64,000 bases of DNA from Phallusia mammillata. Lineage: Eukaryota. The stretch covers positions 15,066,001 through 15,130,000 of the forward strand of contig OZ281496.1 in NCBI GenBank assembly GCA_965637545.1, read 5' to 3'. Position 1 is the stretch's first letter; each line of letters begins with the position of its first letter. The position numbers and the translations under genes were made by a program. This document shows positions 8,461 through 57,035 of this stretch, piece after piece. The notes below the pieces were generated by a model. That model saw only the letters and a list, made by a program, of their open reading frames with translations, was not told where the DNA came from and did not search any database.

Positions 8461-9950
8461 TGGTGTGAGATATGTTCTACAGCCAAGAATGCTACGTTGA
8501 ACAAATAAGAACATCTCATGATTTGTAACGCTGATTAACATAATTACACAGTCCAAATTAAAACGAACACCTTTAGCCTTCAGGTAAAGCAGTCAGATTT
8601 GCAAAACTAAAGTTTGTGTGCGTTACAATGCTTATCACCTAAAATTGCATTAAAACGGAGAAACACAGCACATGCGTTTAACTATTTTATGTCTAACTCT
8701 CGGCTGCAGTAACATGCTAATTACCTGTATTAACTGGCTTCGCAATGTGGGAGCCAACTGTGCAACAATTTTCCTTCTAACATGTCCGATTACAAACGTC
8801 ATTTGTATTGGTCACAAACTGGGACAAACAGAAATATTCCACTGGCAAAATTACTAAACCGTTTTTGCAGCGTTAATTCCATGACATAAAACAAAGGTAA
8901 TGGAGCAGATATAAATTAATCTCCGCGTAAATATTAGTTCTTATTTGTGCGGTAAGTGGTCGACGTCAAGGCTATGACACATTTTATTCCATTAAAGAAA
9001 AGTTATTGCAACATGGTTATTAACTTTTATCAGGCCATGAAATTATAGTAGAATAGGTTAAAGTTAATGTAGTGCAATAATTCAAAGTGGTTTGGGACAA
9101 ACATTTTAATTGAAGGCAAAAATCTGAATCTGAATGTTGTTTTTTTCAAATTAAAACGAATCAGAACAATTTACAAGTACCCATATTTGATTTGTGCAAT
9201 AATAATTCTTGCGTCGCTTGCATCATTTGAAAACTTATTGTCTGCAACTATAAGCTAACTGGCTTCGCAATATGTCAGTCAGCTGTGCAACAATTTCCTT
9301 TTCATGCGTACCTGATATGCTCGCTCAAGTTCTTAAACGAACAAAATCAATAGCTCACTAACTTTACAATGCTACTGAAAATCCTTCAACTGGGCTACCA
9401 TGACATGTGGTCGCGCATACATGAAAAACTTTGAAGTAACGTCAGTTCGTAGTGTCTTCACAGTTACGCAGACACGAGCCATGTGAGAAAAAATGCTAAC
9501 ACACAGCGTTGGCCTGACAGGTCAAATGTTTCTGCTTTAGTTCAGCATTTCGCCGGAGGCCTTCCATAATAGCCTGGCTATATGTAAGCTTTGACATGAA
9601 CTGATGTTATCGCATTTATCTAATTTAGAGCGTTGATCTGGCGTCGGATTCTATACAAATGCAATACAAACAAATTTACTTTGTTCCTCCAATCATACTG
9701 TAACGCTCATATTTTTGCGTTTCACCTTACATAAGATGTGATAATGCTGTAAGGATAAAATCTTTTTTTCATTTTACCCTGCCGACATTGATTCTAATCT
9801 GGGCGATCCATAAACAACAATGGAATAAAATTCACTGAACACTGATGCATAGCAGCAAGTTTGACAAATGCTCGCCACTTTTAAACGCATGACCAATTAA
9901 CCGGCCATTCGGCAATTGTCCAAACAATGCAACTTTAAGATGCGATAGTC

Positions 9951-22124: not shown

Positions 22125-22264
22125 ATTCTATTTGAATAAGAAAATATGTATTTTTGCTTAATAACAGTTATGTTTTGTGGCATCAAGGTTATGTGAACTG
22201 ATTGTTACCTCAAAGAAAATATTATGGAAAAGTACGAAAAAGTGAAGGTCGTTGGAAAGGGTGC
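22125..22264 (+). pseudogene. NEK8: SL-headed 5' retro-fragment of a NEK8-like kinase mRNA
   Basis: Exact SL at 22125-22140 with no GT after it, an 83-nt UTR, then ATG 22224 MEKYEKVKVVGKG(A), similar to the NEK8 N-terminus MEKYERIRVVGRGA. Truncated by a hAT end. Gene identity rests on only 13-14 residues. Confidence 0.65.
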
Positions 22265-23060: not shown

Positions 23061-25079
23061 CAGTGGCGGCTCGTGCCTAAAATTTCTGGGGGTGCTGCTC
23101 CAAATTTTAGTCTTTATTTAACATATATAAGTTGGCAATATATAGAAAAGCCACATTTCTAGATTTCCAGCCATTGTTTTGTGTAAAAAAACAAGTAATA
23201 CAAATCTTAATTAGTAACTCCATTGTGACGTAATTTTCGTTACGCATATAATGTATACGAGTGTAAACAGCAGACAGTGTATCATTGGGGAGTTTTGTTT
23301 ACTTGCATGGCAACGGGCCAAACTCAACAACATGCGGTAATAATGTGGCACAAAAACACACGTGACACAGATTTAAAATGAAGCGAATGTTAATACGGCA
23401 AAACACTCACAACAATATATTGAACAAAGTAGTAATAATTGGACGAAAAGTATTTCAGTTAGACAACATTGAAGAATAACTGGTTATAACAATGACCACT
23501 AAGTAACACACTTGCTATTCTTTCATTAATATGGTCATGTTTCATTTGAGTAACTTATAGTCACAGTCATTGTTTCAACATATCTCATGACACTTCACAG
23601 ATTATTGCCACACAAAAAAACTAGCCACAAAGCTTTTTATTGGTATCATAACTGACAAATTTAACAACCACATTACATTTGTGTCAGAACTTGGTTATTT
23701 AAACATATTTTCTTTAAATTTTGTGTACAGACTAACAATTGTCTTTCAGTTTGCTTATAATTCCCTTTTTTGAAGTGCAATACTCCTCCAAGCTTTGAAA
23801 TTTACAACAATCTCATATAAATTTAATCCATATGATGAAACCTGTTTGTTTCTATTTAGCGCTAGCACTGCAAATGCAAGTCTTTTGGAAATAATGGTGT
23901 CCCTTAGAAAAGTTTGCATCCTTTTCAGTGTTGAAAAGAACCGTTTTGCCTTAAGGACTCATGGAAATTGCAAAAAGGATTTTTCATCTTAGTAATTTAA
24001 CTTGTCAAAACATCATCGAGATTATTTTCAAAGTAATCATGAACATCAGATCTACAGAAACATTTTTATTTCAGTAACTAGCTTTTCTTTGTCAACAATA
24101 GGATATGCTTGGTGGCCACTACTATCTCCTCTGTAGAATGTTCGTTCTTAAGAAACACTTCATGTGAAGCAATTTTTCAGCTACTGTTTAGAGAAACAGT
24201 ACATGTCCAGTATATCAATACACATGATTGCACTTGGTTGCAAATACTGTCCACATGGTGTGTTAAGAAGCCAAAACTTTAAATGGTCATCACTCAGTTA
24301 TTTCAAAATTCCTGTTGGTTCTGCATTTGATATTGCCTGAATTTCAGTGAGGCATTTAACTTCACAGTCACAGAGCTATTTTTCTTTGGTAGCATTCAGA
24401 ACTAAAACTGAGTATTTCTTGTTGTTGCCTATTCCTGCATGACATATTTGGAATAGCAGATGTTTTATCCCATTCTGTCTTAAAACTTTTTAATTCAGTT
24501 ATTTATTATCAATGTTTATAATAATGTATTTATCATAAAGGTTAATCGTGATAACTGCAAAAACTGAAGCCCACTAACAGTCATCTTAAAAAGTCATGAC
24601 TAACCTTCAAACAAATAAATTGATAGATGGCAAAATCGTTATTTAACTATACTCACTGCCGAACTTAAGAATATAGTACACGGGTTTTGCTTTGGCACAC
24701 AATAGACCCGGAACAGACGAATACATGCTGGATTGCCGGTTCACACGCTACGTGATTGATGGAGCTGCGCCAACCGCAGCACCCTGTCGCCTATTTCGCC
24801 CGGCATGTAGCTTTTCCAAGTGCACACAGCTACAAAACGTCACGAAACTGGAACTGCAGCTCCAGCAAAGATAACTTATTAATTTCGTATTTTTTGAAAA
24901 GGTGATCAAGGGGCAAATTATGCTTATATATTGCCAACGAATCAAAAAAGTTGTATGTAATATTATAGTAGGAGGTAAAAGTAGGTAAAGATAAAAATTA
25001 AAATTAAAAAAAAAAAAAATTAGGTAAAAATATTAGGGGGTGCTGCAGCTCCGCAGCACCCTAGCACGAGCCGTCCCTG
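23061..25079. mobile_element. Non-autonomous hAT-like element, copy B (both TIRs)
   Basis: TIRs CAGTGGCGGCTCGTGC / GCACGAGCCGTCCCTG. Homologous to 4431..7110 without the two nested MITEs. TSD not recognisable. Confidence 0.7.
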
Positions 25080-34809: not shown

Positions 34810-34825
34810 ATTCTATTTGAATAAA
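34810..34825 (+). other. Orphan SL-like sequence (15/16)
   Basis: ATTCTATTTGAATAAA. No GT donor and no recognisable ORF follows. Confidence 0.55.
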
Positions 34826-36873: not shown

Positions 36874-37623
36874 TTGGAGAAGCTGATCAGTTCGATTCAC
36901 ACAGTAAAGAAACCTCATAGATGTGATGTTTGTGAGAAAGTATTTGGGAGCTACGGAAACTTGAAGAGGCACATGTTAACTCACACCAAAGAGAAACCCT
37001 ATAGATGTGATGTTTGTGAGAAAGTATTTGGACTCTATGGAAATTTGAAGAGACATATGTTGACTCACACCAAAGAGAAATCTCAGCAATGTGTAGTTTG
37101 TGAGAAAAGATTTAGTTCGGCAGGTTATTTGAAGACACATTTATTGATCCACAGTAACGAAAGACGGCATGAATGCAACATTTGTAAAAAACGATTTAAT
37201 CGCCGCGAAAATTTAAAAACGCACATATTGACTCACACGCATGAGAAACGCCACCCATGTGATATATGTGAAAAGGCATTTATCACGGGCGGGTTGTTAA
37301 AAAAACACATGTTGACCCACACCAATGTCAAAGAGCATCATTGCGACCTTTGTAAGAATAGATTCAGGCGCAGTGGGGATTTGAAAAAACACATGGTGAC
37401 TCACACCAACGAAAAACACTATCGATGTAATGTCTGCGAGAAAAGATTTGGCTTGAGCGGAAATTTGAAAAGGCACATGTTGACACACACGAAAGAGAAA
37501 CTCCACCATTGTGAGGTTTGTGAGAATCGATTCTGTCGTAGAGATGCTTTAAAACGTCACATGCTGACTCACACCAAAGAAAACAACGGTAATGTGGTCA
37601 ATGTGGAAAAGGACAATAAGTAA
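36874..37623 (+). CDS. Intronless C2H2 zinc-finger array (8 fingers); 5' part probably frameshifted from an ATG near 36770
   Basis: Eight CxxC..HxxxH units with THTKEKP-type linkers. Confidence 0.8.
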   Translation: MEKLISSIHTVKKPHRCDVCEKVFGSYGNLKRHMLTHTKEKPYRCDVCEKVFGLYGNLKRHMLTHTKEKSQQCVVCEKRFSSAGYLKTHLLIHSNERRHECNICKKRFNRRENLKTHILTHTHEKRHPCDICEKAFITGGLLKKHMLTHTNVKEHHCDLCKNRFRRSGDLKKHMVTHTNEKHYRCNVCEKRFGLSGNLKRHMLTHTKEKLHHCEVCENRFCRRDALKRHMLTHTKENNGNVVNVEKDNK

Positions 37624-38199
37624 AAAAACATACTTTCATCCACTTATATGTTATAGTTAGTAATAAACTACTTGTGTTTTTTGCGGTATTATAATTTGAA
37701 GCATTACGTTCAATTAATTTTGGAGCCTTATTTGTATTGTTTTGTTTAATAGTAGTCCCTGCAATGAAAATATGTTGGTGGAGAGTGTCAAATTAGAACA
37801 TGTCCGGGCACATTTGCGAACAATCCAATGCGGCACAGTTGTGTTTTGTATTTCTCCTTGTTTACCGACTGTTGTTGCTGTTTTTCGTTTGGTTGTTAAA
37901 GTTAATGATGTTCTTGTTCATGTTTACTCGTCACCTGTTCATGTGGTTTTCTCCTTTTATGGTTAAATTTTGTGGAAAATTTCAAGAACCAAATTGCACA
38001 TCTAAATCTATTTTCCAAAAGGATACATTACAGTCAGAACATACGAAAACACCCGTGTAAAATAAAATAGACTATTGTGAAAATTGTACCTTTTCATTTA
38101 GATGATTACGTTAGGTTTGTAGGCTTATTGTGACGTTATTAACGATTAAGATAAAGTTGTTTGAATCTGTCAGTCAGTCAAATTTTATTTGCATAGTCA

Positions 38200-38630
38200 C
38201 TTCATCATCATCACAGTTCCATTGTTGAACGGATACGTAAACAGCAAGGACACCGAAAAAACCGTAGGTTATCGAGTCAAGTGTCCTGTTATTTGAATTG
38301 TGGTTGAATTCCGTTGTGGGTATGTTCTGCCGTGGGATCGCAACCGACCGCACGAGCCTGGCGGGGTACGTCCGGTTGAATAAGACGATAGTTGAACCCG
38401 CAGGTTCTGCTGGCCAAATGAAACCCGCCTAAACGGAAACACCAGCTCGGTTCCTCGGAACGTTTCCTGTGATCCTGTAGGCAGACCCGGGTGTCCCGAG
38501 GACAGTTCGTTGCGACGATGAGAATGTTGCCGTCGAGCATCTCCTCCTCTGCTTTTGTAAGATCGATGACGAGATCTCAGATGTTGTTCGCTGGGAAGGT
38601 GCTGCACTGTCTTCGACCCGGATGACCGAT
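38200..38630 (-). mobile_element. GC-rich fragment ending in a short (GAT)n tract; possible 3' end of a non-LTR element
   Basis: Sharp compositional contrast with the flanks and a catcatcatca tract at about 38203-38213. No diagnostic domain recognised. Confidence 0.3.
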
Positions 38631-38679
38631 CTGAAAAAAACTAAATCCTACGGCAGTATTTTGTTCTTTTGTATGTGAC

Positions 38680-41600
38680 TAAGTTAAGTTTTCCAGTTTA
38701 ATAATATAATAGTATAGAATAAAAATAAAATAAAAAGTAAAATCACACTAAGATAAAACTGAAACACACGCACACAAAAAAAACGGCATACGGCATATTG
38801 CAGATAGGGGTACGCAAAAGCGACGGCATATCGCCGCGACGGCATATTGCAGATAGGGGTACGCAAAAGAGTAGTAGATAATACGGAGAAACTGTTGTCC
38901 AAAGTAGTCACGCAGCTTGAACATAATACCGCAGGCTTGTGCTAGTTTTCGTTCCACATGGGCTATGTGTTTCTCCCATTTTAACTGATCGTCGATATAA
39001 ACTCCAAGGTATTTTGTTTCTGTTGATCGCTGTATTTGCTGCAATCCTATGGAAATCGAAAACTTCTGCGTGTTTGAGCGCTTGGATGGACAAAACAGTA
39101 AATACGTTGTTTTACTCGTATTAAGCGATAGTTTGTTGTGGCGCATCCAATTGTCAACATAAAAGAGTTCCTTGTTTACGTTTGCCTGTAGATCAGTCAG
39201 CGACTCTGATGACATGCTTAAACACGTGTCATCCGCAAAGAGTTTCGTTGTGAATTTAGATGCCGTTGGTAAATCGTTTATGTAAAGCGAGAAGAGTAAA
39301 GGAGCCAGTGACGAACCTTGAGGGCAGCCACGCGTAACGTTTAGCAGTTGTGATGTTACGTTTGATATGCGTGTGCATTGTTTACGGTGACTTAAGTAGC
39401 TACGGAACAGTTCTAAGGGGCTTCCCGTATTCAATACTGATGCTCTAACTTCCACAACAAAATCATGTGATCGACTGTGTCAAACGCTTTTGACAGGTCC
39501 AAGAAAATGGCACATGTGTATTGTTTTTGATCAAGCGCAGCTAACACTTTTTCATGGATGTCGTAAATTGCCAGGGAGGTGGACCGGTTGCATCGAAAAC
39601 CATACTGGTGAGTTGTTAACATTCCATTTTTTTTTCAACGTAGTCGTACAAACGTTGATACATAATTTTTTCAAATACCTTAGCAAAAGGGGTTAGCAAT
39701 GAAATTGGTCTGTAGTTAGTGCATTCAACTCATGAGCCTGATTTATGAATTGGTATTACTTCCGCAATTTTAAGTTCAGTGGGGTATTCCCCATGTTGTA
39801 TACACCCGTTGAAAGTCTCTGAGAGCATAGGTGAAATAATGCTTTTAACCATTTTGATGTATTTAATAGGAATTTCATAACTGGGCACAGATTTTTGACT
39901 ATCAAGAGTGGATATATACATTTCCACCTCATCTGGGGTAGTGTCATAGAAGAAGAAGGATGATGGCTTTATGATGGAGGAACTATCAGGTGGTGGCATA
40001 ACTGGCTGTGGAATGGATGATGCCATATTTGCTCCTATGTTAGCAAAGAACTGATTGAAATTGCTAGCAATTGAAACTGGGTCTTTAGTGCATTGTGATA
40101 TTCCATCTAGTTTGAGTTCTGCAGGAGCTTTGAGTAAAGTTTGTTTTCGTGACAACAAACTATTAATAATTTTCCACATTCCACCAATATCATTTCTGTG
40201 ATTTGTTAGTTCTTTTTCAATGTATTTATGTTTAGCTTCTCGCAGAATGTGGTTTAGCTTATTACGATACTGTTTATATTGATTATGTTTACTTGTACTT
40301 GAAAACCCTGACCTACATAAAGCATGATACATTTTATTTTTTACTTTGATTAATTTATAAATACTCTTGCTTATCCAAGGTTTCTTGGCCAATTTTCTTC
40401 TTCTTCTACTCACTGTGGTCAGTGGTGCATGGTGTTGCAGTATTTTGTTAAATACATGCTTAAATGAAGAAAATTGATGTAATATAGTTTCAGATAACAG
40501 TGGTATTTTCATAACAGCATCTTTTATATCAGAAATAAAATCTTCACTAATAAATTGGGTCTCATTTCTTCTCAGGAATTTTTCTGTTTTATCACAGCAA
40601 GTTGAATGCAATAACACAAAAGTTGGCAGGTGGTCAGAAATGTCTGCAGTCAGTATTCCTGATTTGCAGGTAATATTTACATTGTTGGTGTAAAAATGGT
40701 CAATAAGAGTTTGGCTGTGGTTTGTTAAACGTGTGGGTTGACATATTAAGGGTGATAGACCATAAATTTGCATAGAATCTAAAAAAATTTGAATGCTTTT
40801 AACTTCCTTGTATTGCATGAGATCTATGTTAAAGTCACCACATATATATACAGGATGGTTGGTATCACTGAGTTTATGCAATACTGATGATAGTGCATCC
40901 TGGAACACTTCAAATGAATGTTTGGGATGTCTGTATATTACTCCCAATATTACATTTTTTTGTTTCAGTTTAAGTTGCAACCAAAGACTTTCAGTATCTG
41001 GAGCAGTAAATTTAATATCAGATCTTATGCTATATAAAATGTGTGATTTTATATATACTCCTACTCCTCCTGCACTATGTGAAGTATCGATATGATGGAA
41101 ATTATATCCCATTAAATCAGTAGCAGTGATTATGCCATTCAGGGTTATTCTAGTCTCAGATATCATAACAATATCAGGGGATCTGACCATATCAGACAGG
41201 AATTGTTCTAAAGCAGGTTTGTTTTTTCTCAAACTTCGAATGTTTGTGTGCAATATATACATATCTTTGTTGCTAAGTTTCTTTAGGGCATGGTTCAAGG
41301 ATGCACAATCACAGTAACCTGAATGGGTGCGATCAATGCTGGCCAGTAAACAGGGTGAAAATGGTGATTTTACTGGTGAAATAGCATTTACTAGCTCTGA
41401 GTTACTGACATTGCTGAATGGTAAATAGGACAATAGGCATCGGGTACAAAAGTATGGGGTGTTATTGTGAAGATTACTTGCACATTTGTTGCATTTCATG
41501 TGGAAGAAAAGTGGTAAAAGTTTGTGGGTTTAAATACTACAAGTATTAACAAATCTTATGCCTCACCAAGTCTTTGTCACTGTGGATGGCAATGATGTTG

Positions 41601-42412
41601 CTGTTGTCATCCTTCTTCAGAAAAGTCGCTCCGTTCCTAGTCCAGATGTGATGGTACTGGTGCTCCCTCTTAAACCGGAGACAGTTGTTAAATCGCTCAC
41701 GGTTCTTCTTTGTCAGGCTCTCGTTGATGAAAATTTGGTTCCCAGGGGCTACGCCTTTGTTGGATTGTTTCAGCTTATACCTGTTGGAGTAAATGGAATC
41801 TCTCACTTTACGGCTCATAAATTTAGCAATGATTGCCGAACGGGGATGATCTTTAGAGACTCTCCTAAGTCGGTGAGAGATGCTAATGTCAGGCTTGGTG
41901 ATGGTGATCCCTAGCCTCTTCACAGCCGAGATTACTAATTCATCTGTGCACTCCGTTTCCGAATAGGGCAGGCCTTTGAACTCCAGGCATGGTCTTCGAC
42001 CATATTGCTCGAGATCATTTAAGTTCTCGGCATTGGAGATGGTTTGTGCTTGGAGGTCTTTAACAGCCTTTTTGAGTTCCTTATTTTCAGTTTTTAGAAG
42101 TTTCATCTCAGCCTCGTTGTTTACCAGCTGAGTCTGCTAGTTATCATATTGTTCCTGCAAGAAAGTTTGGCTCTTGCGGATCTCCCTGAGCTCATTGATT
42201 AGTTCTTTTAGGGTTGAGTCGGTGGAGATTTTACTCTCCCGAACCTCATCCCTCAGGGATTCTATCCTTTCAAGAACCACAGATTGTTCATCTTTCTTTT
42301 TCCTCAATTGAGACATTTTTCCAATAATCCTCAAGTTTTCACGAAATTTCACAGCAAATCAGATTTTTTATATTTAAATAATGTTACCTAAGCAACCTTA
42401 TTCAAATAGAAT
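38680..42412 (-). mobile_element. L2/CR1-type LINE with a complete 5' end that begins with the SL; degenerate
   Basis: ORF1 42316..41546 (coiled coil, LEQYGRRPCLEFKG, W-x-R-x-G; one in-frame TAG at 42137). ORF2 from 41499 with APE (HTNIRSL, ISET, GDFN, IDH, SDH) and RT (FLDLSKAFD, PQGS, FADDT). Stop, frameshifts and a C-terminal deletion with a ~40-bp duplication at 38785-38868. Confidence 0.9.
42397..42412 (-). other. Exact 16-nt spliced leader at the LINE 5' end
   Basis: Plus strand CTTATTCAAATAGAAT is the reverse complement of ATTCTATTTGAATAAG, 80 nt upstream of the ORF1 ATG. Confidence 0.92.
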
Positions 42413-43053
42413 CTTTTCAGGCACATAATCAATCTCAATTCTTATCAAGTGTTAAAACAACAGCATTCCTGTGCCCGCCAAGTCGTCATGGTTGTACTGC
42501 CCTGTGCTATAGTTTATGTCAAATGGGGCTGTCGAAAAACATTAAGGTGTGACACGCTACACATAATATACTATAAAATATATGGCAAGTTAACGAATGT
42601 ATTCTTTAGCAAGAACTTTCTGCAACGTGCAGTGAGGTTTAGGTAGTAAACGAACGTGTTGTCAAACAGCACACCTGACGTGTTGTCTACGCCTGCAGTT
42701 TCACGACACACCTGGTAGGTTGTTTGAACACGCGTGTTGTCTAGAGTTACACAGCACAATACGCCAAACACAGTGTTGTTTTCATTGCATAGTGCAAAAC
42801 GGAACAGTGCATAATAAATAGGAAAGAAAAGTTTGAACGAACAAAAAGAAAGGAACACTGAATATAAAAAAAAAATTTGCCACACAGTGAATTTTTGCAC
42901 ATTAGTTTTAAGTATTTGAAAAAAATCTTCATTGAGAACAATGTATGGATAGTTAGGCATGTTTCCAGGTTGGTCCTTTCAAGAAAATAGCCAATATTAC
43001 AACATGTTTAAACAAACATACAAATTGTAACAACTTTTTTGCTGTAAGTATCA

Positions 43054-47989: not shown

Positions 47990-48706
47990 AAATGGGCTAA
48001 TTTTAGTACTTACATATCCTTCACTTCGAGGTACTTTGCTCTTTAATGCTGGAAATGATTTTATTATTGATTGTGCAAGATCTATTTTTAGATGTGTTGA
48101 AGGATATCTGCAACCAGACATGTATTAATGCTTGCAGATTACACAAACCAACAATGTCAATCATATATTGTCCCCAAAACATCATAAACAAGCTAATTAA
48201 TTGTTCCAAAAATAAAATGCACAAGATTACCCTCTAACAGTTGCTCATATTTAATACTGTTATCTTCAACTTGATTGTGATTGGTAGTACTGCTTTCCAT
48301 ACTATCCACAGTTACATCTGGAATGTCAGTTCGAATCAATTTGTGATATTTTTTTAGATGTGAGATATAATTGTCAAACCTTGTGAAACTTGAACAACAG
48401 CCCTGTTGGCAACATTTTATGCTGTGAAGTTTGTCATGGTGTCGGTTTCTTATATGCCTTGATAACCCCTTTACATCATGGGTATTAAATACACATTTAA
48501 AAGGACACACATACTGATATACGTCCATTATGAGTGCACACAGAACACTAGTGCCACTTAGCAGTTTTCTAGAAAATCCTATACAGAAAAACTAAATTTA
48601 TCTTACTTCTCATCACTTCCTCAATTGCAGTGTTGATTAAGTCTTTTTCCTTCAATAAATTCAACAGCCCCTCAATATCCATTGAAGAAACTTTCGACGC
48701 TTGCAT
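47990..48706 (-). mobile_element. Probable CACTA/EnSpm-like transposon 5' fragment
   Basis: Short exon MQASKVSSMDIEGLLNLLKEKDL.. ending in GTAAG (~48606-48706), followed by ORF 48193..48528 with two atypical C2H2 fingers (CPFKC..HIRNRH, CCQQGC..HLKKYH) like the N-termini of animal CACTA transposases. No TIR or catalytic domain seen. Confidence 0.4.
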
Positions 48707-49616: not shown

Positions 49617-50390
49617 TTGAAGATTAGACGAGAATCAAACGACTGTACAGAGAGGACAGAACCTAGAAACCCAGAAAAAATGTTTCCTGTCAAATTTCAA
49701 ACTCAATGTGAAACTGACGGAAAATGTTTCCAATGTGAAGTTTGTAAAATGGTTTTTGCCAAACAATACCTACGTGAAAGGCGCATGATGGCACATTCGG
49801 AAGAAAGACCTTTTCAGTGTAAAATAAGCGAGGTCCAATTTGAAAGGAACATCGACATGAAAGCACACTTGTTGACACACTCAGATGAAAGGTCATATAA
49901 ATGCGATGTTTGCGAAAAAGGATTTAAAAGAAAGGAAAATCTTCTCTCCTATTTGTTAGGGCATAAAGAAGAACTGTTCAAATGTGACATTTGTAAAAAG
50001 GGATTTAAGAAAAGGAGCAACCTAAAAAAACACTTGGAAATTCATTCTGGTATTAGACGACACAGGTGTGAAAACTGTGACAAACTTTTTGGTCAAAAAC
50101 GAGATTTAGAAATGCGCAAACTGATTCATACTGGTGAGAAACCTTTCCAGTGCTGTTATTGTGACAAAAGATTTAATTCAACTTCCAGCAGAGGAAGGCA
50201 TTTGAAGATTCACACTGAAGAGAGAAACTTCAAATGCGACATTTGTGAGAAAACATTTACTCAATCAGTAGGGCTCACAAAGCACATGATGACTCACACA
50301 GGTAAAAAAACCATACAACTGTGATTACTGTGAAAAATCCTTTCGATTTAAATGTTATTTGAAAAATCACGTAAGCATCCAAAAATTTTT
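49617..50390 (+). pseudogene. Intronless C2H2 zinc-finger array, partly degenerate
   Basis: About 7-8 fingers (HTGEKPFQC), two degenerate. Frameshift in an A7 run near 50303, after which one more finger is readable. Confidence 0.8.
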
Positions 50391-50868
50391 GTTAAAATGT
50401 TTTGAATTCTCAAACTTAACTAAACTTCAAAATCTCAAAGAGATACATGTGCATAAATGTATTTAAGACCTCACGCCCAAATGAAATGCCTTTTTGTGTA
50501 CTATTTTAGTCAGAATCATGAGATATTGTTTTATTATGGGTCCCCTTCCCAGAAGGGAACACATCTTGATTTCACTCTGTTTTTTTCTTTTTTCAGCCGA
50601 AGCGTTTCCATGCACTTTTGGCATGAAATCGTTGGTGGATTTGGATGAAAATTTCACAGATGGTAGATATAGTTATGTAGATGTGCCATCCGCTTCGTTT
50701 GAGTTAATAACCCCAATATTTACCCCACTAGCCCCCAAAATGTAAAACGTTTTTGCATGTTGCTGCGCACCACAAATGAAAAAATTCTGTGGAGTAACAG
50801 TATAGTAAAGGTCCCAGAGAACATGCTACTTGTGTTTGTGCATTACTTGGAGGGCCGAATGGCCTGGC

Positions 50869-53800
50869 TTCATTCTATTTGAATAAGGTAAGCATCATAC
50901 GCTGACCTTGGCACATTCAATAGAATCAAAACCCCCCCTGCATGTTTGGTGTGCTATTTTTTTGCTTGCTTTTTGTTTACTTTATTGCTTTAACGCACTA
51001 ACCCTAGGCAGCTTGCTAGTTTATCTTTGATATTTGTTCAGTTAGTGGGCGCAAAGGCGCATTGCAGGGCTTTTTGTTTCCTTCTTTTACTTTCTAGATT
51101 TACCACAAACTCTAGTGTAGGCCGCTTGGTAACCCCTTTTTTTGGTAACTTTTTTTCTCTTGTAAGTTCTTTGTAGTTTGTAGTAATTTAACTTGCCCTT
51201 AAGGCCCCCTAACCGGTAATCCCCTTCTTCGTGCTAAATACCCCGTGGTTTTTTGGTAGTAGATAGTTGATAGTGACTTAAACTTTTGTGTGTGTCCTCT
51301 GCCCCTAAGGCTTGTCGCGCCACCTAGTGCTCTATATCCCCCGGTCTCTTCCGCCCTCTTACTTTTTCACGCTTCTGCCTCCGCTCTTTAGCGGCGCCGG
51401 AAGAGGAAAACGTAAGAGCGCTCTTTTACTGCCACGGCGAGTCTCCCTGGCCTCCGCTCCCCGGCTTGTGCCTGCGAGCGGCTCCTCGGCTCTTCCCCGT
51501 GTTTTTTCCTTATCTACGTTTTTGCCAATTAAGTCTGCCGACTTAATTGTTTTTGCTCGTCCTTTGCTATCTTTCCGCCGCCTAAAGTCACAAAGCACCT
51601 CCACGCCAGTTTAAACCAAATTTTCGTCACACTAATCAAAACAGGCCACACCCCTGCCACGCCCTAAATTCTAAATCTGCCCAAAACTTAAATCAAAAAA
51701 CAAAAAGATATCCGATTAATTGTTTCTGTTATACAATTTAATATTTAAATCGCATAACCCCCTTCCGCATTTTTAATATTTAAAAAGAACTCTCCCACTT
51801 TCCCCCTTTTTTTCTGATAATTTTTCAATTTGCTGTAAACGTGCGCCCCCCCCACCTTTCAACTACAACCTACCTTATCGTTTAACAACCTTCAAAACCA
51901 CTACAAAAATGGTCCTCAACATTGAACGACACCTCTTAGAAGACAGAACGCTGCATATTACCGTAAAATCACACGAATATTATGATCTGGCTAAATTCAT
52001 CGCGCTGTTCACCCGCAACGGGATTCTTCCCTTTTATGAAGATACGCTTGAGGGAGTGCGATGTCTTAATCGAAAAAAATCGATCTTTAAAATCACTTTT
52101 AGGAACGACGTGAGAAATTGTGAGAAACATACTGAACTTTACACAAGAATCTACAGAGGCCTAACCTTTGGGAATAATGGAGACGACAAAATTACTCTTC
52201 TTGCCGAAAAACCCCCCCGGCCCAACACTAAAATAACCCTTTTTCCAGTCCCACTTGAGTTTAATGAGCGACATCTTATGCATATATGCGAAACAACACA
52301 AATCTCAGAAGAACAAACAATCCACCCCCCTTGGATTCCAATTTAGCAATAAAGGTCCAGAAAATCTTGCCCACTTTCTTGCAGGTCTTGATCAGAAAAA
52401 GACACAAATCTTAAACCAACCAATAAACCCTGACTCGGAAAAACAAAAAGAAGCTCTTCCAGATGTCTCAAATTCTTCTCCTCCTTTCAGTACCCCTCAG
52501 CCAATCAAGAACACCCCACCTGTAGAAGAGTTACTAAATTCTGCACCACCAGTGTTGCAGACTGCACCTGAAAAACCCCCTTTACCATCCAACCTGGCAC
52601 CAAAATCCGACCAAAACCTAGCTGGCAATCATCCAACTCCAAGTCCTACTCTTAGAAACCTCTTTGCAGTTGGCGCCGCCAAACAATTACAATTCGGTTC
52701 ACACTCCAGCTCCTCTAATGATGAAATTCCTCAGACGCCGTTACATACCCCCCTTCAGCCAAACAAAGATGCCCTCAAAAACGCCCAAGTTATTCCCAAC
52801 GCAACCATTAGCAGTGTAGAACATGCCTCTCCCATTGAATCTTCCCCAGACGGTAATGGAGCTTTAGTAATCAATACAGATGAATCGACAGAACAAAGCA
52901 AAGAAGAAGACAAAGACCAGGAACAAGAAGAAGACAAAGATGAAGGAACAAAACGGAAGTACAGTAGCAATAGCAGTGGAAACAACAGCTGTACCAAAAA
53001 AGAAACTAAAAAAACAAAAACTAGTACACACCCCCTCTCCCCCTTCTAATTTCCCATGGCGCACAACAATCTAAAAATTGTAACTCTGAACACAAACGGT
53101 TTCGAACGCAATTACAATCACATTGAAAATTTCATACGCAAATCGAATTCGGATATCTTTTTGTTTCAAGAAGTACACAAATTAAACAAAACTCTTTTCG
53201 AAAACTGGTCTCAAAAAAACAATTTAATTTATTTCTTTAATTCTCATTGGTCTAATCCATTCCAAAAAGAACATAAATTTGACGGCACCCTAATTTTAAT
53301 AAAACAAAGTTTTGGGCATGACATAAAATTCCATCACGAAATAATAACTGATCATCGTATCCAAAAATTAATTTTAAATTACTACAAACTACAATTTAAT
53401 AGTATGCCAATAAATCTATTTAACATTTATTTCCCTTCCGGCAACACCGCAATCAAAAAAAGAATAGAACATATCCTTAAATTAAACGATGTCTTAGAAA
53501 AACATCAAAACCAACCTCAAATCCTCGGCGGCGACTTTAATCTACTCGACGATAAAATAGACTCATTGACTTCCGCATACCAAATCAAAAGCGACACTTT
53601 AATTTGGCGTGAAACAATAAAAAGATTTAAACTTACCGACTACTTTCGCTTCTTTTATCCTCATAAAAAATTCTACACCCGAATAGGAAACAAATCTTCG
53701 ACCCGTTTAGATCGTATTTACTGCAACACATACCTCCTAAGTAAAGTATTTAAATTCGAACACCACCAAATTATCTTTTCCGATCATTGTTACGCGCCTA

Positions 53801-56800
53801 CCACGACATTTAATTTTAATCTCAACAAACAATGGGGTAAATCCACCTGGAAACTAAGCCTGGACCTATTAAATGACAAAAACTATATCGAATTAATTAA
53901 TAACCTTATTTTAGATTTCGAAAATAAAAAAGACGAAATAGATAACGCTATAACTTGGTGGGAAAAGCTAAAACGCAAAATTAAAAAGAAATCGATCACT
54001 TTCGCGATTGAGAAAAGGAAAAACGACAAAAAAGCCCTCGAAGTAAACCAAAACGAACTCGACGACCTCGTAGAAAAAATGGATCCAAATAACCTAGAAG
54101 CTAATATAAAGTTCGTTGCGCTTAAAAAGAAACTAAAATCCCAACAAGAAAAAGAAATGAAAGGTGCGCAAATAAGAGCCCGTGTTAAACAAGTTACAAA
54201 CGAAGAACGACCTGACAAAATATTCTTTAGAGTCGAAAATATCAAATAAGAAGCAACCAGTATAAGAACGCTAAATATTAACAATAGAATAGAAACGGAC
54301 CACGACCAAATCATAAATGAGGTTCATAAATTTTACGCAAACTTATGGCAAAATAAAAGTAAAACGACCGCAAACGCACAAAACTATTTCCTTCGTAATA
54401 TTAAATTTGACGCAAATGACGACCTAAGCCAAATTTCCCCCTTCACTTTGAGCGAAATCGAAATGTCACTAAACGCAATCAATCTAAATTCGTCACCCGG
54501 TCAAGACGGCATCCCAGCCGAATTTTATAAAAAATTCTGGCCCCTTTAAAAACACAATTTTTACGAATTGACACACAACATATACCTTCAAAAAGAACTC
54601 CCCAACTCTTGCAAAAATGCGATCGTTAAATTAATTCCAAAAAAACATGACAAAACCCTTATCAAAAATTGGCGACCAATATCCCTGTTGAATTCGGACT
54701 ACAAAATAATAAGCAAAACTATAGCAAACCGCTTACAAAACGAACTCAGCAATAAAATCGCAATTGAACAAAAATGCGGCCTCCCAAAAAGATATATACA
54801 GCATATTCATTATAACATTAAAGCTATCATCGAATACGCAAAACAAAAATCGTCCCCTTTGGCCCTCGTTTTAATAGATATAGAAAAAGCGTTTGACACC
54901 CTTAACCACGAATTTATTTTCAAAGTCCTGGAAAAACTACGAACTAACGAATACACCCTGAATTGGATTAAAATACTATACAAAAATATCACAAGCCAAG
55001 TTAATGGCAAACTGACGGAAGAAATCAAAATTCTACGCGGCGTAAGGCAGGGTTGTGGCCTGTCAATGCTCTTATATGTAGCCATGACTGAAGCCTTAAT
55101 TCAAACAACAAACAACAATTCGAAAATAAATGGAATAAAAATTGGCCCGATTGAAACAAAAATACAACAATATGCGTATGACTCAACCTTTGTAATTTCA
55201 AACCAACCCTCTCTGAACGAAATTTTTGAACTAATGAAACTTTACGAATTGGCGTCTGGACAAAAAATTAACAAAAGCAAAACTGAAATTATCGCTTTTT
55301 CCCAAAACCTAAGATCTGATATTACGCGAATTTATCCAAATTTTATAAAAAAACAATGTTAAAATTTTAGGCATTCAATGCTCAATCCACAATTGGCAAA
55401 CAAACAAGAACTGGAAAGAATTTATTAATCACAGTCGAAACATTGTATCCAAATTTATAAATAGAAACCTTTCCCTTTTCGGCAAAATATCTGTAATAAA
55501 TACCTTGATAATTCCCCGAATTTTATTCTTAGCTAGGGCTTTCCCACCGCAACAAAAACACTTAAAAGACCTAAATTATATTATCTATCAATTCCTTTGG
55601 CATCCCAACAAAATTGAACAATTATCTAGGAAAAAACTTATCGCGCAAATTAACAACGGAGGAATTAAAATGTCAGATTTAAAAACTAAAATCGACGCAA
55701 CGCAATTAGAAAAATTACGTGACCTCATTGTACCCGAAAAACACCCTGAAATTTGGCAGCAATGGGCTCTCTATAATTTAGGCTTCAAACTGCGACAAAT
55801 TAAACCTACCATTTTCGATCACAGTAGACCTACAGCATGGAAAACAAACCCCGAATGGCAAAACATTTTCGAGTTATATAAAACTTTAATCGACTTAAAT
55901 AACGAATTTAATTGGACCAAAGCAAAATTAAGACACTTCTACTACGAACTGATAAAGAAAAAAGAAATTATAACCAGCCCAACTCCCAACCCCGACTTTA
56001 AATGGCAAAACGCCCTTTTATAACAAAAAGGAATAAAACGATATTTTAATAATTACGACCGCCAATACGCTTACCTCACCATCCATAACGCATTTAAATG
56101 GGGCGACTTCTTTAAAGAAAAGAAAATTTTTACGCTTAAATCCGGCAGATCCCGACTTCTTTACTGCAAATTTTGTAGGAAAAATACCGACAATATTTCT
56201 CACCTTTTAACGGAATGCATAATATCTCAAAAAATATTAAACGACATAAAATATATTCTTTCCAGTCAGTTCCAAATTTCATTCGACATTAATCCAAATT
56301 TAACTCTTTTGAACTTATTTGATAAAAACATCCCCTTAGTTGTTTTAAAAATGATTGCAATTTGGCGAACGCAAATTATTAAACAAAAAATCAAATTCGA
56401 TATCAAAAACGAATATTTAGAATTCCCCGAACCCTTTGTAAAAAGAACGGCAGCAAAAATTTTGGACATATTATTTGAACAACTAAAACACTTTACAAAC
56501 TCCCTTGACGATACAAACTTTGAACTAATCTTTAATATCAACCCTAAAAACCTTACTATAAATACTTCGGTTATGGCAACATAACCTGTTAAAAAAAAAA
56601 TGTACGTTCTAATGCGCAAGCATAGAAATCATATATTTATAACCCATTTAATCCCTTTAACTACAACCTTGCGACTTTCAAATCGCAATTTTGTAAACGC
56701 TCTTTCTCTCATCTCTGTTTCTTCGTTTCGCTACGCGCTATTTTTGCGCTTGCCCTCTTTCATGTATTTTGTAATATGTTTTTTTGTGTATTATTTCCTT

Positions 56801-56953
56801 ATCTTGTTTTTCATTAATTTTATTGACAATTATTTTTTGCTCCCTGTGAGTTAAGAGCAGCTCCCATAGGAAGGAGACGACACTAACAAGACCGGTTGGT
56901 CGTCACTTGTTGAGGCGAGGTGGGGCCTCTACATAGCAAAAAAAAAAAAAAAA
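50869..56953 (+). mobile_element. L1-clade Tx1-type LINE 1, full length, degenerate
   Basis: TSD ATGGCCTGGC (50859-68 and 56953-62), A16 tail. ORF1 51909..53049 (shifted). ORF2 53056..56584 with APE (TLNTNG, LFQE, GGDFN, RLDR, SDH), RT (KAFD, GVRQGCGLS, YAYD in place of YADD) and a C-terminal CKFC..HLLTEC. Stops and frameshifts. Confidence 0.93.
50872..50926 (+). ncRNA. SL RNA gene-like cassette (SL exon + GTAAG donor + intron-like segment)
   Basis: Exact SL 50872-50887, then GTAAG and CATCATACGCTGACCTTGGCAC. Folds as AAGGT/ACCTT plus AGC/GCT, and the SL exon pairs with ATTCAATAGAAT 50915-50926. Confidence 0.8.
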
Positions 56954-57035
56954 TGGCCTGGCGCGCCTGACCCTTATACAGACATAAAAACCTTGATCGG
57001 GTTCGTCCCCGGGAGTGTCCTGGGTTCGAACCCCG
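56953..57035 (+). pseudogene. tRNA-like sequence (Leu/Ser-type body), 3' part; the 5' part lies at ~50846..50868
   Basis: Removing LINE 1 rejoins GGAGGGCCGAATGGCCTGGC (A-box/D-arm-like) to GCGCCTGA..TCGGG (anticodon-stem-like pair around a ~27-nt insert), a long variable arm and B-box GGTTCGAACC (57023-57032). Acceptor stem and anticodon loop are degenerate. Confidence 0.55.

What the first reader, a model, noticed from the sequence alone, without database searches (positions are those of the whole stretch)
38680..42412. L2/CR1 LINE whose 5' end is an exact SL joined to an 80-nt UTR (trans-spliced form)
Seen: a perfect SL at 42412-42397 followed by GTTGCTTAG.. (not the GTAAG of the cassette at 50888) and the ORF1 ATG at 42316. 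The base before the SL is G. Inference: the LINE RNA was trans-spliced and then copied to its very 5' end, which would discard any promoter upstream of the acceptor. Such a copy could depend on read-through transcription or on the SL itself. The extra G could reflect cap copying, but one base is weak evidence.
Basis: partly seen in the sequence, partly recalled or inferred. Interest (0 to 1): 0.8.

Follow-up and report, generated by a model that had tools for sequence, protein, structure and literature searches.

The report
LINE insertion headed by spliced leader
A broken jumping gene (LINE) in this sea-squirt genome begins with the 16-base leader that the host adds to messenger RNAs only by trans-splicing, and a population allele without the insertion shows the leader is its true front end, so leader-tagged LINE RNA was copied back into DNA.

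Summary
An exact ascidian spliced leader (SL) lies at 42412-42397 (-), followed by an 80-nt UTR and the ORF1 ATG at 42316.

Contigs from three independent DNA runs carry the empty site, joining 38162 to 42409. The insertion is therefore about 38163-42412, and the SL is its 5' terminus. It is flanked by a 6-bp target duplication, AGATTC, and ends in (TGAC)3.

The G before the SL belongs to that duplication, so it is not a copied cap. The first four SL bases coincide with the duplication, which suggests microhomology at the junction.

The 3' limit is 38163, not 38680. The copy is defective: ORF1 has one stop, ORF2 has one stop and two frameshifts, and there is an internal deletion.

In related LINEs from other ascidians:
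- 21 of 50 distinct loci with enough upstream sequence carry an SL-like head.
- The SL joins at four different UTR positions, each preceded by AG in longer copies.
- Stacked SLs and a transduced flank are present.

Trans-splicing of LINE RNA is therefore recurrent. Whether the family depends on it instead of a promoter is inferred, not shown.

This scan reported the same phenomenon on other DNA of this genome (s1-375379, s1-405475, s1-368968, s1-347112). Flatworm papers suggest it in passing. I found no ascidian report.

The parts
42409..42414 (-). 5' copy of the target-site duplication AGATTC. Its last four bases (ATTC) are also SL bases 1-4.
   Evidence: The identical hexamer occurs at both ends. 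The empty-site joint 38162->42409 has 6 letters that fit either side, in runs X1, X2 and X5.
42397..42412 (-). Host spliced leader, 16/16 match, forming the 5' head of the insertion.
   Evidence: Identity with the Ciona SL: PMC1488885, PMC7986045. In X1, 4 contigs show loose ends at 42413 with unlike flanks, so other copies also end at the SL.
42317..42396 (-). 80-nt 5' UTR starting GTTGCTTAGG.
   Evidence: No similarity to the SL-gene intron: 26% of shuffles score as well. It aligns from its first bases with the UTR start of relatives L067 and L069, with 0.3-1% of shuffles scoring as well.
41546..42316 (-). ORF1, with a coiled-coil N-terminal part and a Baculo_FP_2nd-type C-terminal domain. 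It is broken by one in-frame TAG at 42139-42137.
   Evidence: Pfam PF25298, E = 1.7e-9. Up to 56% identity to ORF1 proteins of ascidian-associated contigs. Frame analysis.
38832..41499 (-). ORF2 remnant. AP-endonuclease at about 41244-40630 and reverse transcriptase at about 39729-38994. It has a stop at 39732-39730 and two frameshifts (near 39640 and 39480), and it is cut off at 38832 inside the RT thumb.
   Evidence: Pfam Exo_endo_phos 2.9e-12 and RVT_1 7e-14. tblastn of the frame pieces against relatives. At 38832, other copies continue with an ORF2-like sequence, shown by loose ends with 0.94-0.96 agreement.
38687..38831 (-). Filler of about 145 nt private to this copy. It is AT-rich and includes a local 31-nt duplication, and it replaces the deleted 3' part of ORF2.
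   Evidence: Depth is lowest in the bin 38668-38834, and loose ends lie at 38832 and at 38681-38686. Sequence.
38181..38686 (-). Non-coding 3' module that is much more abundant in the genome than the LINE body. It is probably the family's 3' region, over-represented through 5'-truncated copies or shared with a short element.
   Evidence: Summed contig depth (the tool warns it is no copy number) is about 5-10 times that of the body bins at 38167-38500, falling to about 1.5-3 times at 38501-38667, in X1, X2 and X5. No Pfam, tRNA or Rfam match.
38169..38180 (-). 3' tail (TGAC)3.
   Evidence: At 38176, 14-15 contigs in X1 and X5 diverge into unlike flanks after similar short repeats.
38163..38168 (-). 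3' copy of the target-site duplication AGATTC.

Best explanation
This is a polymorphic retrotransposon insertion of about 4.25 kb (38163-42412, minus strand). It is an APE+RT LINE with ORF1 and a short-repeat 3' tail. Its RNA template carried the host spliced leader as its first bases. The leader reached LINE RNA by SL trans-splicing at an AG acceptor at the start of the 5' UTR, either in the generation that made this copy or in an ancestor. Target-primed reverse transcription then copied the RNA up to the leader. The 5' junction was sealed using a 4-nt overlap (ATTC) between the leader's start and the target, which left the duplication AGATTC. An SL-headed copy has no upstream promoter of its own. 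It can re-enter the cycle when transcription reads in from the flank and a new leader is spliced on. The splice can use the AG that ends the resident leader, which leaves no trace. It can use an AG further upstream, which gives stacked leaders or a transduced flank. It can use an AG further downstream, which gives a shortened UTR. Shown: the leader is the terminus of the insertion, and relatives carry leaders at several AG-defined junctions and in stacks. Inferred: dependence on read-through transcription and re-splicing, and any benefit from the cap or for translation.
For: - The SL is an exact 16/16 match at the stated place.
- Empty-site contigs in three DNA runs from different studies join 38162 to 42409 with 6 shared letters. 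A second empty haplotype joins 38150 to 42414.
- AGATTC lies at both ends and (TGAC)3 lies at the 3' end.
- Four X1 contigs match up to 42413 and then run into unlike flanks.
- The UTR is not the SL-gene intron.
- Among relatives found by ORF1, 21 of 50 distinct loci with enough upstream sequence have an SL-like head on the ORF1 strand. That is 25 hits against 0.46 in shuffles, at 23 times the density found elsewhere.
- The SL joins four different UTR positions: before TTCACCAAAG, GTTTGTAGGC, GCTGTGT and TGATTAGT. Each is preceded by AG in longer copies. The flanks upstream of the SL are unrelated.
- Stacked SLs occur in L078 (SL-TG-SL), L014 (three), L011/L016, L055 and L020, which has about 61 nt of foreign flank between two SLs.
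- Two copies of the closest ORF2 relative, from a further assembly (L088, L089), are identical from the SL onward and have different flanks.
- The window's UTR aligns from its first bases with the GTTTGTAGGC-type UTR start.
Against: - Only one copy of this family could be read base by base in this genome. The same-genome support is four loose-end contigs.
- The first 4 SL bases cannot be assigned to the RNA rather than the target.
- It is unknown whether the leader was spliced on in this generation or inherited as DNA from an SL-headed parent.
- About as many relatives start with a non-SL head (ATCCAG-TTCACCAAAG), so the leader is not obligatory in the clade.
- There is no usable RNA evidence: the one RNA-labelled run is only a guessed label, and its contigs do not resolve the 5' end.
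- The copy itself is dead.
Confidence: 0.85

Rival explanations
1. The leader is now only inherited DNA. It was captured once, long ago, and SL-headed elements are transcribed from an internal promoter that starts at SL base 1. The SL start ATTCT fits an initiator-like A-N-W-Y-Y pattern. No trans-splicing is needed in each cycle.
For: The same SL-to-UTR junction type occurs in the window, L067, L072, L001, L020 and L088, which come from several hosts. Many LINEs have internal promoters (general knowledge; L1Tc Pr77 in PMC1874656). No RNA data argue against it.
Against: Four different junction positions, and at least five stacked or transduced heads in one host's relatives, need repeated splicing onto transcripts that began upstream of the element. 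This rival explains persistence but not these features. It can coexist with the best explanation.
Confidence: 0.25
2. The head is a piece of an SL RNA gene (exon plus start of intron), carried along by 5' transduction or by insertion next to an SL gene. This is what the neighbouring Tx1 element at 50859-56962 shows.
For: The base pair after the SL is GT in the window and in several relatives. In L088 it reads GTAA, like the SL gene. A LINE with an unspliced SL-gene cassette lies 8 kb away (note s1-395742).
Against: There is no similarity between the 80-nt UTR and the SL-gene intron beyond GT. The empty site is not an SL gene. In longer relatives the same UTR start is preceded by a different 10-mer that ends in AG. 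The SL also joins three other positions that do not begin with GT.
Confidence: 0.04
3. The head is a reverse-transcriptase template switch from the 5' end of LINE RNA onto an SL RNA or onto another SL-bearing mRNA during integration, as in U6/L1 chimeras.
For: LINE reverse transcriptases do switch templates (general knowledge). SL-bearing RNAs are abundant.
Against: A switch onto SL RNA would bring in intron sequence. A switch onto an mRNA would bring in part of that mRNA's UTR. Here the leader exon ends exactly at a position that is an AG acceptor in relatives, and the same junction recurs in independent copies and hosts.
Confidence: 0.04
4. The SL is a chance match or an assembly artefact.
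For: None specific. The leader is AT-rich, like the genome.
Against: A 16/16 match at the exact insertion boundary. 0.11 matches expected per window at up to 2 mismatches. Public contigs independently end at the same base.
Confidence: 0.01

Closest known systems
SL-relic retrogenes of dinoflagellates (PMC6050394, PMC12014239, PMC5585692)
   Same: Genome-encoded leader at the 5' end of retroposed copies. Stacked relic leaders arise from repeated rounds of trans-splicing and retroposition.
   Different: Those are host mRNAs copied in trans. Here the tagged RNA is the retrotransposon itself. The ascidian leader has its only AG at its 3' end, so re-splicing at that AG leaves no relic. Stacks arise only when an AG in the flank is used.
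[quoted passage not shown]
   Same: The same idea is proposed there: retrotransposon transcripts received the leader and were then integrated.
   Different: It is stated only as a possibility, with assembly artefact as the alternative and no insertion boundaries. Here there is an empty-site allele, a target duplication, several AG-defined junctions and stacks, and the host is a chordate.
LINEs that live in SL RNA genes (SLACS/CZAR/CRE of trypanosomatids, NeSL-1 of C. elegans; from general knowledge) and the Tx1-type element with an SL-gene cassette at 50859-56962 (note s1-395742)
   Same: The LINE RNA ends up carrying leader sequence at its 5' end.
   Different: Those elements gain it by inserting into the SL gene and being co-transcribed, and they keep gene or intron sequence. 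This element is inserted at a non-SL site, carries the exon only, and has an AP endonuclease.
5' processing of read-through LINE transcripts by HDV-like ribozymes (R2, RTE, L1Tc; from general knowledge)
   Same: The proposed function is the same: free a promoter-less element's RNA from upstream host sequence at a precise 5' end.
   Different: The mechanism here is spliceosomal and would also supply a cap. No ribozyme-like match was found in 38000-43000.
Microhomology at LINE 5' junctions (human L1, zebrafish L2; from general knowledge)
   Same: There is a 4-nt overlap (ATTC) between the element's 5' end and the target.
   Different: Here the overlapping bases belong to the host leader.

Membership tests
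Retroposed copy of an SL trans-spliced RNA | Leader exon present in DNA without the SL RNA intron | tested here: met
   The SL is followed by GTTGCTTAGG. The UTR compared with the SL-gene intron scores like shuffles (26% score as well).
Retroposed copy of an SL trans-spliced RNA | Leader lies at the exact 5' boundary of an insertion (empty site, target duplication) | tested here: met
   Empty-site joints in X1, X2 and X5, and the AGATTC duplication. SL bases 1-4 are ambiguous because they overlap the duplication.
Retroposed copy of an SL trans-spliced RNA | Junction corresponds to an AG acceptor in unspliced or longer versions | tested here: met
   Met in relatives at four junction positions. 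For the window's own family it rests on a co-linear but weak UTR alignment.
Retroposed copy of an SL trans-spliced RNA | RNA with this leader-UTR junction exists in the animal | not testable with these tools
   The single read-laying run gave only contigs, and the RNA label of run X15 is a guess.
   Pfam Exo_endo_phos and RVT_1 in ORF2. ORF1 has a Baculo_FP_2nd-type domain.
   (TGAC)3 abuts the 3' target duplication. The relative L088 has a TCTTG-type repeat downstream of ORF2.
   No reference LINE set was available. The protein hits carry no clade names.
SL-gene-specific LINEs (SLACS/CZAR/NeSL, Tx1 in SL genes) | Inserted within or next to an SL RNA gene | tested here: not met
   The empty site reads ...ctgaaaAGATTCaaacaac..., which contains no SL gene.
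SL RNA gene or pseudogene | Leader followed by the GTAAG donor and the rest of the SL RNA | tested here: not met
   Compare the cassette at 50872 with 42396 onward.
LINEs with an HDV-like 5' ribozyme | Ribozyme fold at the 5' end | tested here: not met
   An Rfam scan of 38000-43000 at E <= 1 gave only one chance-level, unrelated hit.

The most novel reading that the evidence does not exclude
These ascidian LINEs may need no promoter of their own. Any transcript that reads into a copy would be trimmed and capped by SL trans-splicing. The AG that ends the resident leader would serve as the acceptor, so the head renews itself in every cycle. This would be a spliceosomal counterpart of the HDV-like ribozymes of R2 and RTE elements. 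It would also explain why SL-tagged retrocopies are so common in this genome, with at least three in this 64-kb window.
Probability: 0.35. Interest if true: 0.8.

Novelty: new variant of a known kind. Interest (0 to 1): 0.65.

Why it matters
How LINEs without a transferable promoter get a defined, translatable 5' end is a long-standing question. The known answers are internal promoters, ribozymes, and residence in transcribed genes.

A chordate LINE clade that repeatedly takes the host's spliced leader would add a fourth answer. It would do so in an organism where reporters can be electroporated and trans-splicing assayed.

There is also a practical consequence. Genome-encoded leaders at LINE heads will be mistaken for SL RNA pseudogenes or for trans-splice sites in SL-based annotation of ascidian genomes.

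The empty-site allele makes this particular copy a clean, datable example.

Tried and rejected
- **Cap-copied G.** Rejected. The G is in the target duplication and is present in the empty allele.
- **UTR equals the intron of an SL gene.** No similarity.
- **Conserved hairpin between the leader and the UTR.** The window folds into an 11+5 bp stem (z = -1.9). Ten relatives do not (one, L072, has a partial stem), so it is not a family feature.
- **Nature of the 3' module 38169-38686.** It is not a tRNA-derived SINE, has no Pfam domain and has no Rfam family. It remains undefined beyond 'high-copy 3' region'.
- **Other copies in the window.** None found.
- **Same-species copies through protein searches.** The best hits were 56% identity for ORF1 and 41% for ORF2, so the family of this genome is not in that collection. 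L006 is 5'-truncated, and L007, a distant relative, has no leader.
- **Findings index by sequence.** Blank.
- **Literature.** Seven searches found no report of SL-headed LINEs in tunicates. Yeats et al. 2010 on Ciona SL genes and pseudogenes is not held and may mention such loci.
- **Host gene context.** Only C2H2 zinc-finger arrays and anonymous ORFs lie nearby, and no gene was identified that could drive read-through.
Full report
**What is there**

On the minus strand the window reads ...cctgaaaAG | ATTCTATTTGAATAAG | GTTGCTTAGG..., with the 16-mer at 42412-42397. This is the published 16-nt spliced leader (SL) of Ciona (PMC1488885 Table 1; PMC7986045).

At up to 2 mismatches the window holds four matches, against 0.11 expected from shuffles:
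- This one.
- An SL-RNA-gene-like cassette at 50872 (+), followed by GTAAG.
- An exact copy at 22125 (+).
- A 15/16 copy at 34810 (+).

Downstream of the leader come:
- An 80-nt UTR.
- ORF1, with its ATG at 42316, one in-frame TAG at 42139-42137, and a Pfam Baculo_FP_2nd-type domain.
- ORF2, with its ATG at 41499. It has AP endonuclease and reverse transcriptase domains, one stop at 39732-39730 and two frameshifts.

**Where the element really begins and ends**

I laid the contigs of four public runs on 38000-43000. Three DNA runs from three different studies (X1, X2, X5) each contain a contig that joins 38162 directly to 42409, with six letters that fit either side. X1 and X5 also contain a second, slightly different empty haplotype that joins 38150 to 42414.

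The sequence explains the six letters. AGATTC stands at 42414-42409 and again at 38168-38163. The predicted empty site ...ctgaaaAGATTCaaacaac... carries it once.

Immediately before the 3' copy is (TGAC)3 (38180-38169). At that point 14-15 contigs per run diverge into unlike flanks, so it is the family's 3' terminus.

The insertion is therefore about 38163-42412 (about 4.25 kb), not 38680-42412. Its 5' terminus is the leader.

In X1, four contigs match up to 42413 and then continue with mutually unlike sequence (agreement 0.57). Other copies in the same species therefore also end at the leader.

- The G before the leader is part of the target duplication and is present in the empty allele. It is not a copied cap.
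- The first four leader bases (ATTC) are also part of the duplication. Strictly, only leader bases 5-16 are proven to have come in with the insertion. The simplest reading is that the cDNA reached the leader's 5' end and was joined to the target through a 4-nt overlap, as is known for L1 and L2 junctions (general knowledge). A cDNA that stopped 4 nt short would need a 1-in-256 coincidence to rebuild the leader.

**State of this copy**

Frame analysis against relatives shows ORF1 in one frame with one stop. ORF2 continues through one stop and two frameshifts as far as the RT thumb.

At 38832 other copies continue with a consistent sequence (agreement 0.94-0.96) that reads on as ORF2 (...YAVAAWGSGYAAS...). 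The window instead has about 145 nt of private, AT-rich filler with a local 31-nt duplication (38831-38687).

Next comes a 3' module (38686-38181). Its summed contig depth (which the tool warns is not a copy number) is about 5-10 times that of the LINE body at 38167-38500 and about 1.5-3 times at 38501-38667. It has no Pfam, tRNA or Rfam match.

Depth rises from the 5' end to the 3' end, as expected for a family with many 5'-truncated copies.

At many positions every public contig differs from the window, including a 2-base surplus in an A-run at 39627. The exact filled allele therefore seems absent from those runs. The insertion is polymorphic and possibly rare, but its age is unresolved.

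**Is the sequence after the leader an SL-gene intron?**

No. The 80-nt UTR and the 80 nt after the leader in the cassette at 50888 share nothing beyond GT; 26% of shuffles score as well. The empty site is not an SL gene.

**Relatives**

The window has no second copy. Protein searches found no same-species copies: the best identity was 56% for ORF1 and 41% for ORF2. They did find many relatives on ascidian-associated metagenome contigs and on two long-read assemblies.

A scan with an ORF1 alignment returned 80 loci, which reduce to 56 distinct ones. Of the 50 with enough upstream sequence:
- 21 have an SL-like 14-mer (up to 2 mismatches) 100-1100 nt upstream of ORF1 on the same strand.
- That is 25 hits, against 0.46 in shuffles, at 23 times the density found elsewhere in the loci.

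The anchored comparison is the key result. The leader is joined to these UTRs at four different positions:
- before TTCACCAAAG;
- before GTTTGTAGGC (the window's type);
- before GCTGTGT;
- before TGATTAGT.

In longer copies each of these positions is preceded by AG (ccAG, caaAG, tttAG/caaAG, taaAG). Upstream of the outermost leader the loci are unrelated. This is the signature of splice acceptors, not of a gene-derived head.

Several copies carry stacked leaders:
- L078: SL-TG-SL.
- L014: three in a row.
- L011/L016: 13 nt between two leaders.
- L055/58/60.
- L020: about 61 nt of foreign flank between two leaders.

These require an SL-headed parent that was transcribed from upstream and spliced again at an AG in its flank.

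Two copies of the closest ORF2 relative, from another assembly (L088, L089), are identical from the leader onward and differ completely before it.

The window's UTR aligns co-linearly from its first bases with the GTTTGTAGGC-type UTR start (L067 and L069; 0.3-1% of shuffles score as well). This is weak, but it places the window's junction at the homologous acceptor.

**Mechanism**

Shown:
- The RNA template of this insertion had the leader at its 5' end.
- In this LINE clade, leaders have been spliced on repeatedly and at several acceptors.
- Some SL-headed parents were transcribed from their flank.

Inferred:
- SL-headed copies lack a promoter and depend on read-through transcription.
- The AG that ends the resident leader, or that ended the older 10-mer TTCACCAAAG, is itself the usual acceptor. 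Re-splicing there would restore the same head without a trace. The swap between TTCACCAAAG|GTTTGTAGGC and SL|GTTTGTAGGC at the same base fits this idea.

Not known:
- Whether the leader of this copy was added in its own generation or inherited as DNA.
- Whether the leader's cap helps translation.

About as many relatives begin with a non-SL head (ATCCAG-TTCACCAAAG), so the leader is frequent but not obligatory.

**Rivals**

- An internal promoter that starts at leader base 1 could coexist with the best explanation, but it does not explain the stacks or the alternative junctions.
- An SL-gene-derived head and a template switch onto SL RNA are both disfavoured by the lack of intron sequence and by the AG rule.
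- Chance is excluded.

**Comparison with the literature**

- Leader-tagged retrogenes with stacked relics are well known in dinoflagellates (PMC6050394, PMC12014239).
- A 2025 flatworm survey discarded 597 partial-leader loci in LTR and LINE elements with the same suggestion (PMC12582326).
- For Ciona, SL 'pseudogenes' are said to be rife (PMC7986045, citing Yeats et al. 2010, which I could not read).
- Seven full-text searches found no description of SL-headed LINEs in tunicates.

The kind is therefore known. What is new is the chordate LINE case with a proven boundary, several acceptors and stacks.

**Earlier notes of this scan**

Four notes on other DNA of this genome describe LINEs headed by the leader (s1-375379, s1-405475, s1-368968, s1-347112). 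Two notes on this window describe an SL-tagged kinesin retrogene and a Tx1 element with an SL-gene cassette. I used them as leads only. What is specific to this locus is the empty-site allele, the target duplication that explains the G, the corrected 3' end and the AG-rule table.

**Limits**

- There is one readable copy in this genome.
- Contigs, not reads, were laid, so allele frequencies and RNA 5' ends are not available.
- The CR1/L2 label rests on architecture and the 3' repeat, not on a phylogeny.

Noticed in passing
window 22125-22260 (+): An exact SL is followed by about 85 nt of UTR and an ORF beginning MEKYEKVKVVGKGA, which looks like the N-terminus of a protein kinase. The ORF is cut after about 14 codons by a repeat that also occurs at 25034. 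This is probably another SL-tagged retrocopy. It lies back to back with the kinesin retrogene of note s1-395764.
   Followed up: no
window 34810-34825 (+): A 15/16 SL (last base A) is followed by AT-rich sequence with no obvious ORF. Its origin is unknown.
   Followed up: no
window 50872-50935 (+): An SL-gene-like cassette (SL + GTAAGCATCATACGCTGACCTTGG...) lacks the exact AGCTTTGG Sm motif reported for the C. intestinalis SL RNA (PMC7986045). About 35 nt downstream it has a stretch complementary to the leader (ATTCAATAGAAT).
   Followed up: partly
L057:2700-2757, L037:2290-2363, L051:2300-2331, L010:2440-2470, L047:2570-2600: SL-less relatives start with ATCCAG/ACAG + TTCACCAAAG. The 10-mer is repeated head to tail 2-4 times, as relic leaders would be if a 16-nt leader ...CAG|TTCACCAAAG were re-spliced at its internal AG. 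This could be a second leader of that host, or the LINE head acting as its own mini-exon. It is unexplained. The motif is absent from the window.
   Followed up: partly
L024:2370-2384, L055:2838-2852, L080:2721-2735, L021:2733-2747, L061:2718-2731: A degenerate internal leader relic (GGCTATTTGAATAAG and variants) sits inside the UTR of one subfamily, with newer heads stacked in front of it. This points to an old round of leader capture.
   Followed up: partly
L050 minus strand, about 556-640 from the reversed start: Three SL copies in tandem are each followed by GACTGAGG. Similar SL + GACTGA/AGCTGA... units occur in L052, L057, L013, L029 and L031. This may be another SL-headed repeat family or an SL gene type of that host.
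   Followed up: no
L088:205-240 (+) and L088 minus strand 8635-8685: The leader and its reverse complement stand next to each other (cttattcaaatagaat..ATTTGATTTGAATAAG), each followed by ACTTAATAGAATCG. This is a palindromic SL arrangement of unknown nature.
   Followed up: no
window 42388-42382 (-), L088:1887-1893, L004:921-927: A 5'-splice-site-like GGTAA(C/G/T) lies 4-9 nt after the leader in the window and in two distant relatives. It could be chance in AT-rich UTRs, or it could be a signal that helps use of the acceptor.
   Followed up: no
window 39620-39640: All public contigs lack 2 bases that the window has in an A-run at 39627. This frameshift is private to the copy or is an assembly error in a homopolymer.
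   Followed up: no
window 36897-37484 (+), 49617-50324 (+), 48193-48528 (-): C2H2 zinc-finger arrays flank the LINE, so the region is a zinc-finger gene cluster rich in retro-insertions.
   Followed up: partly
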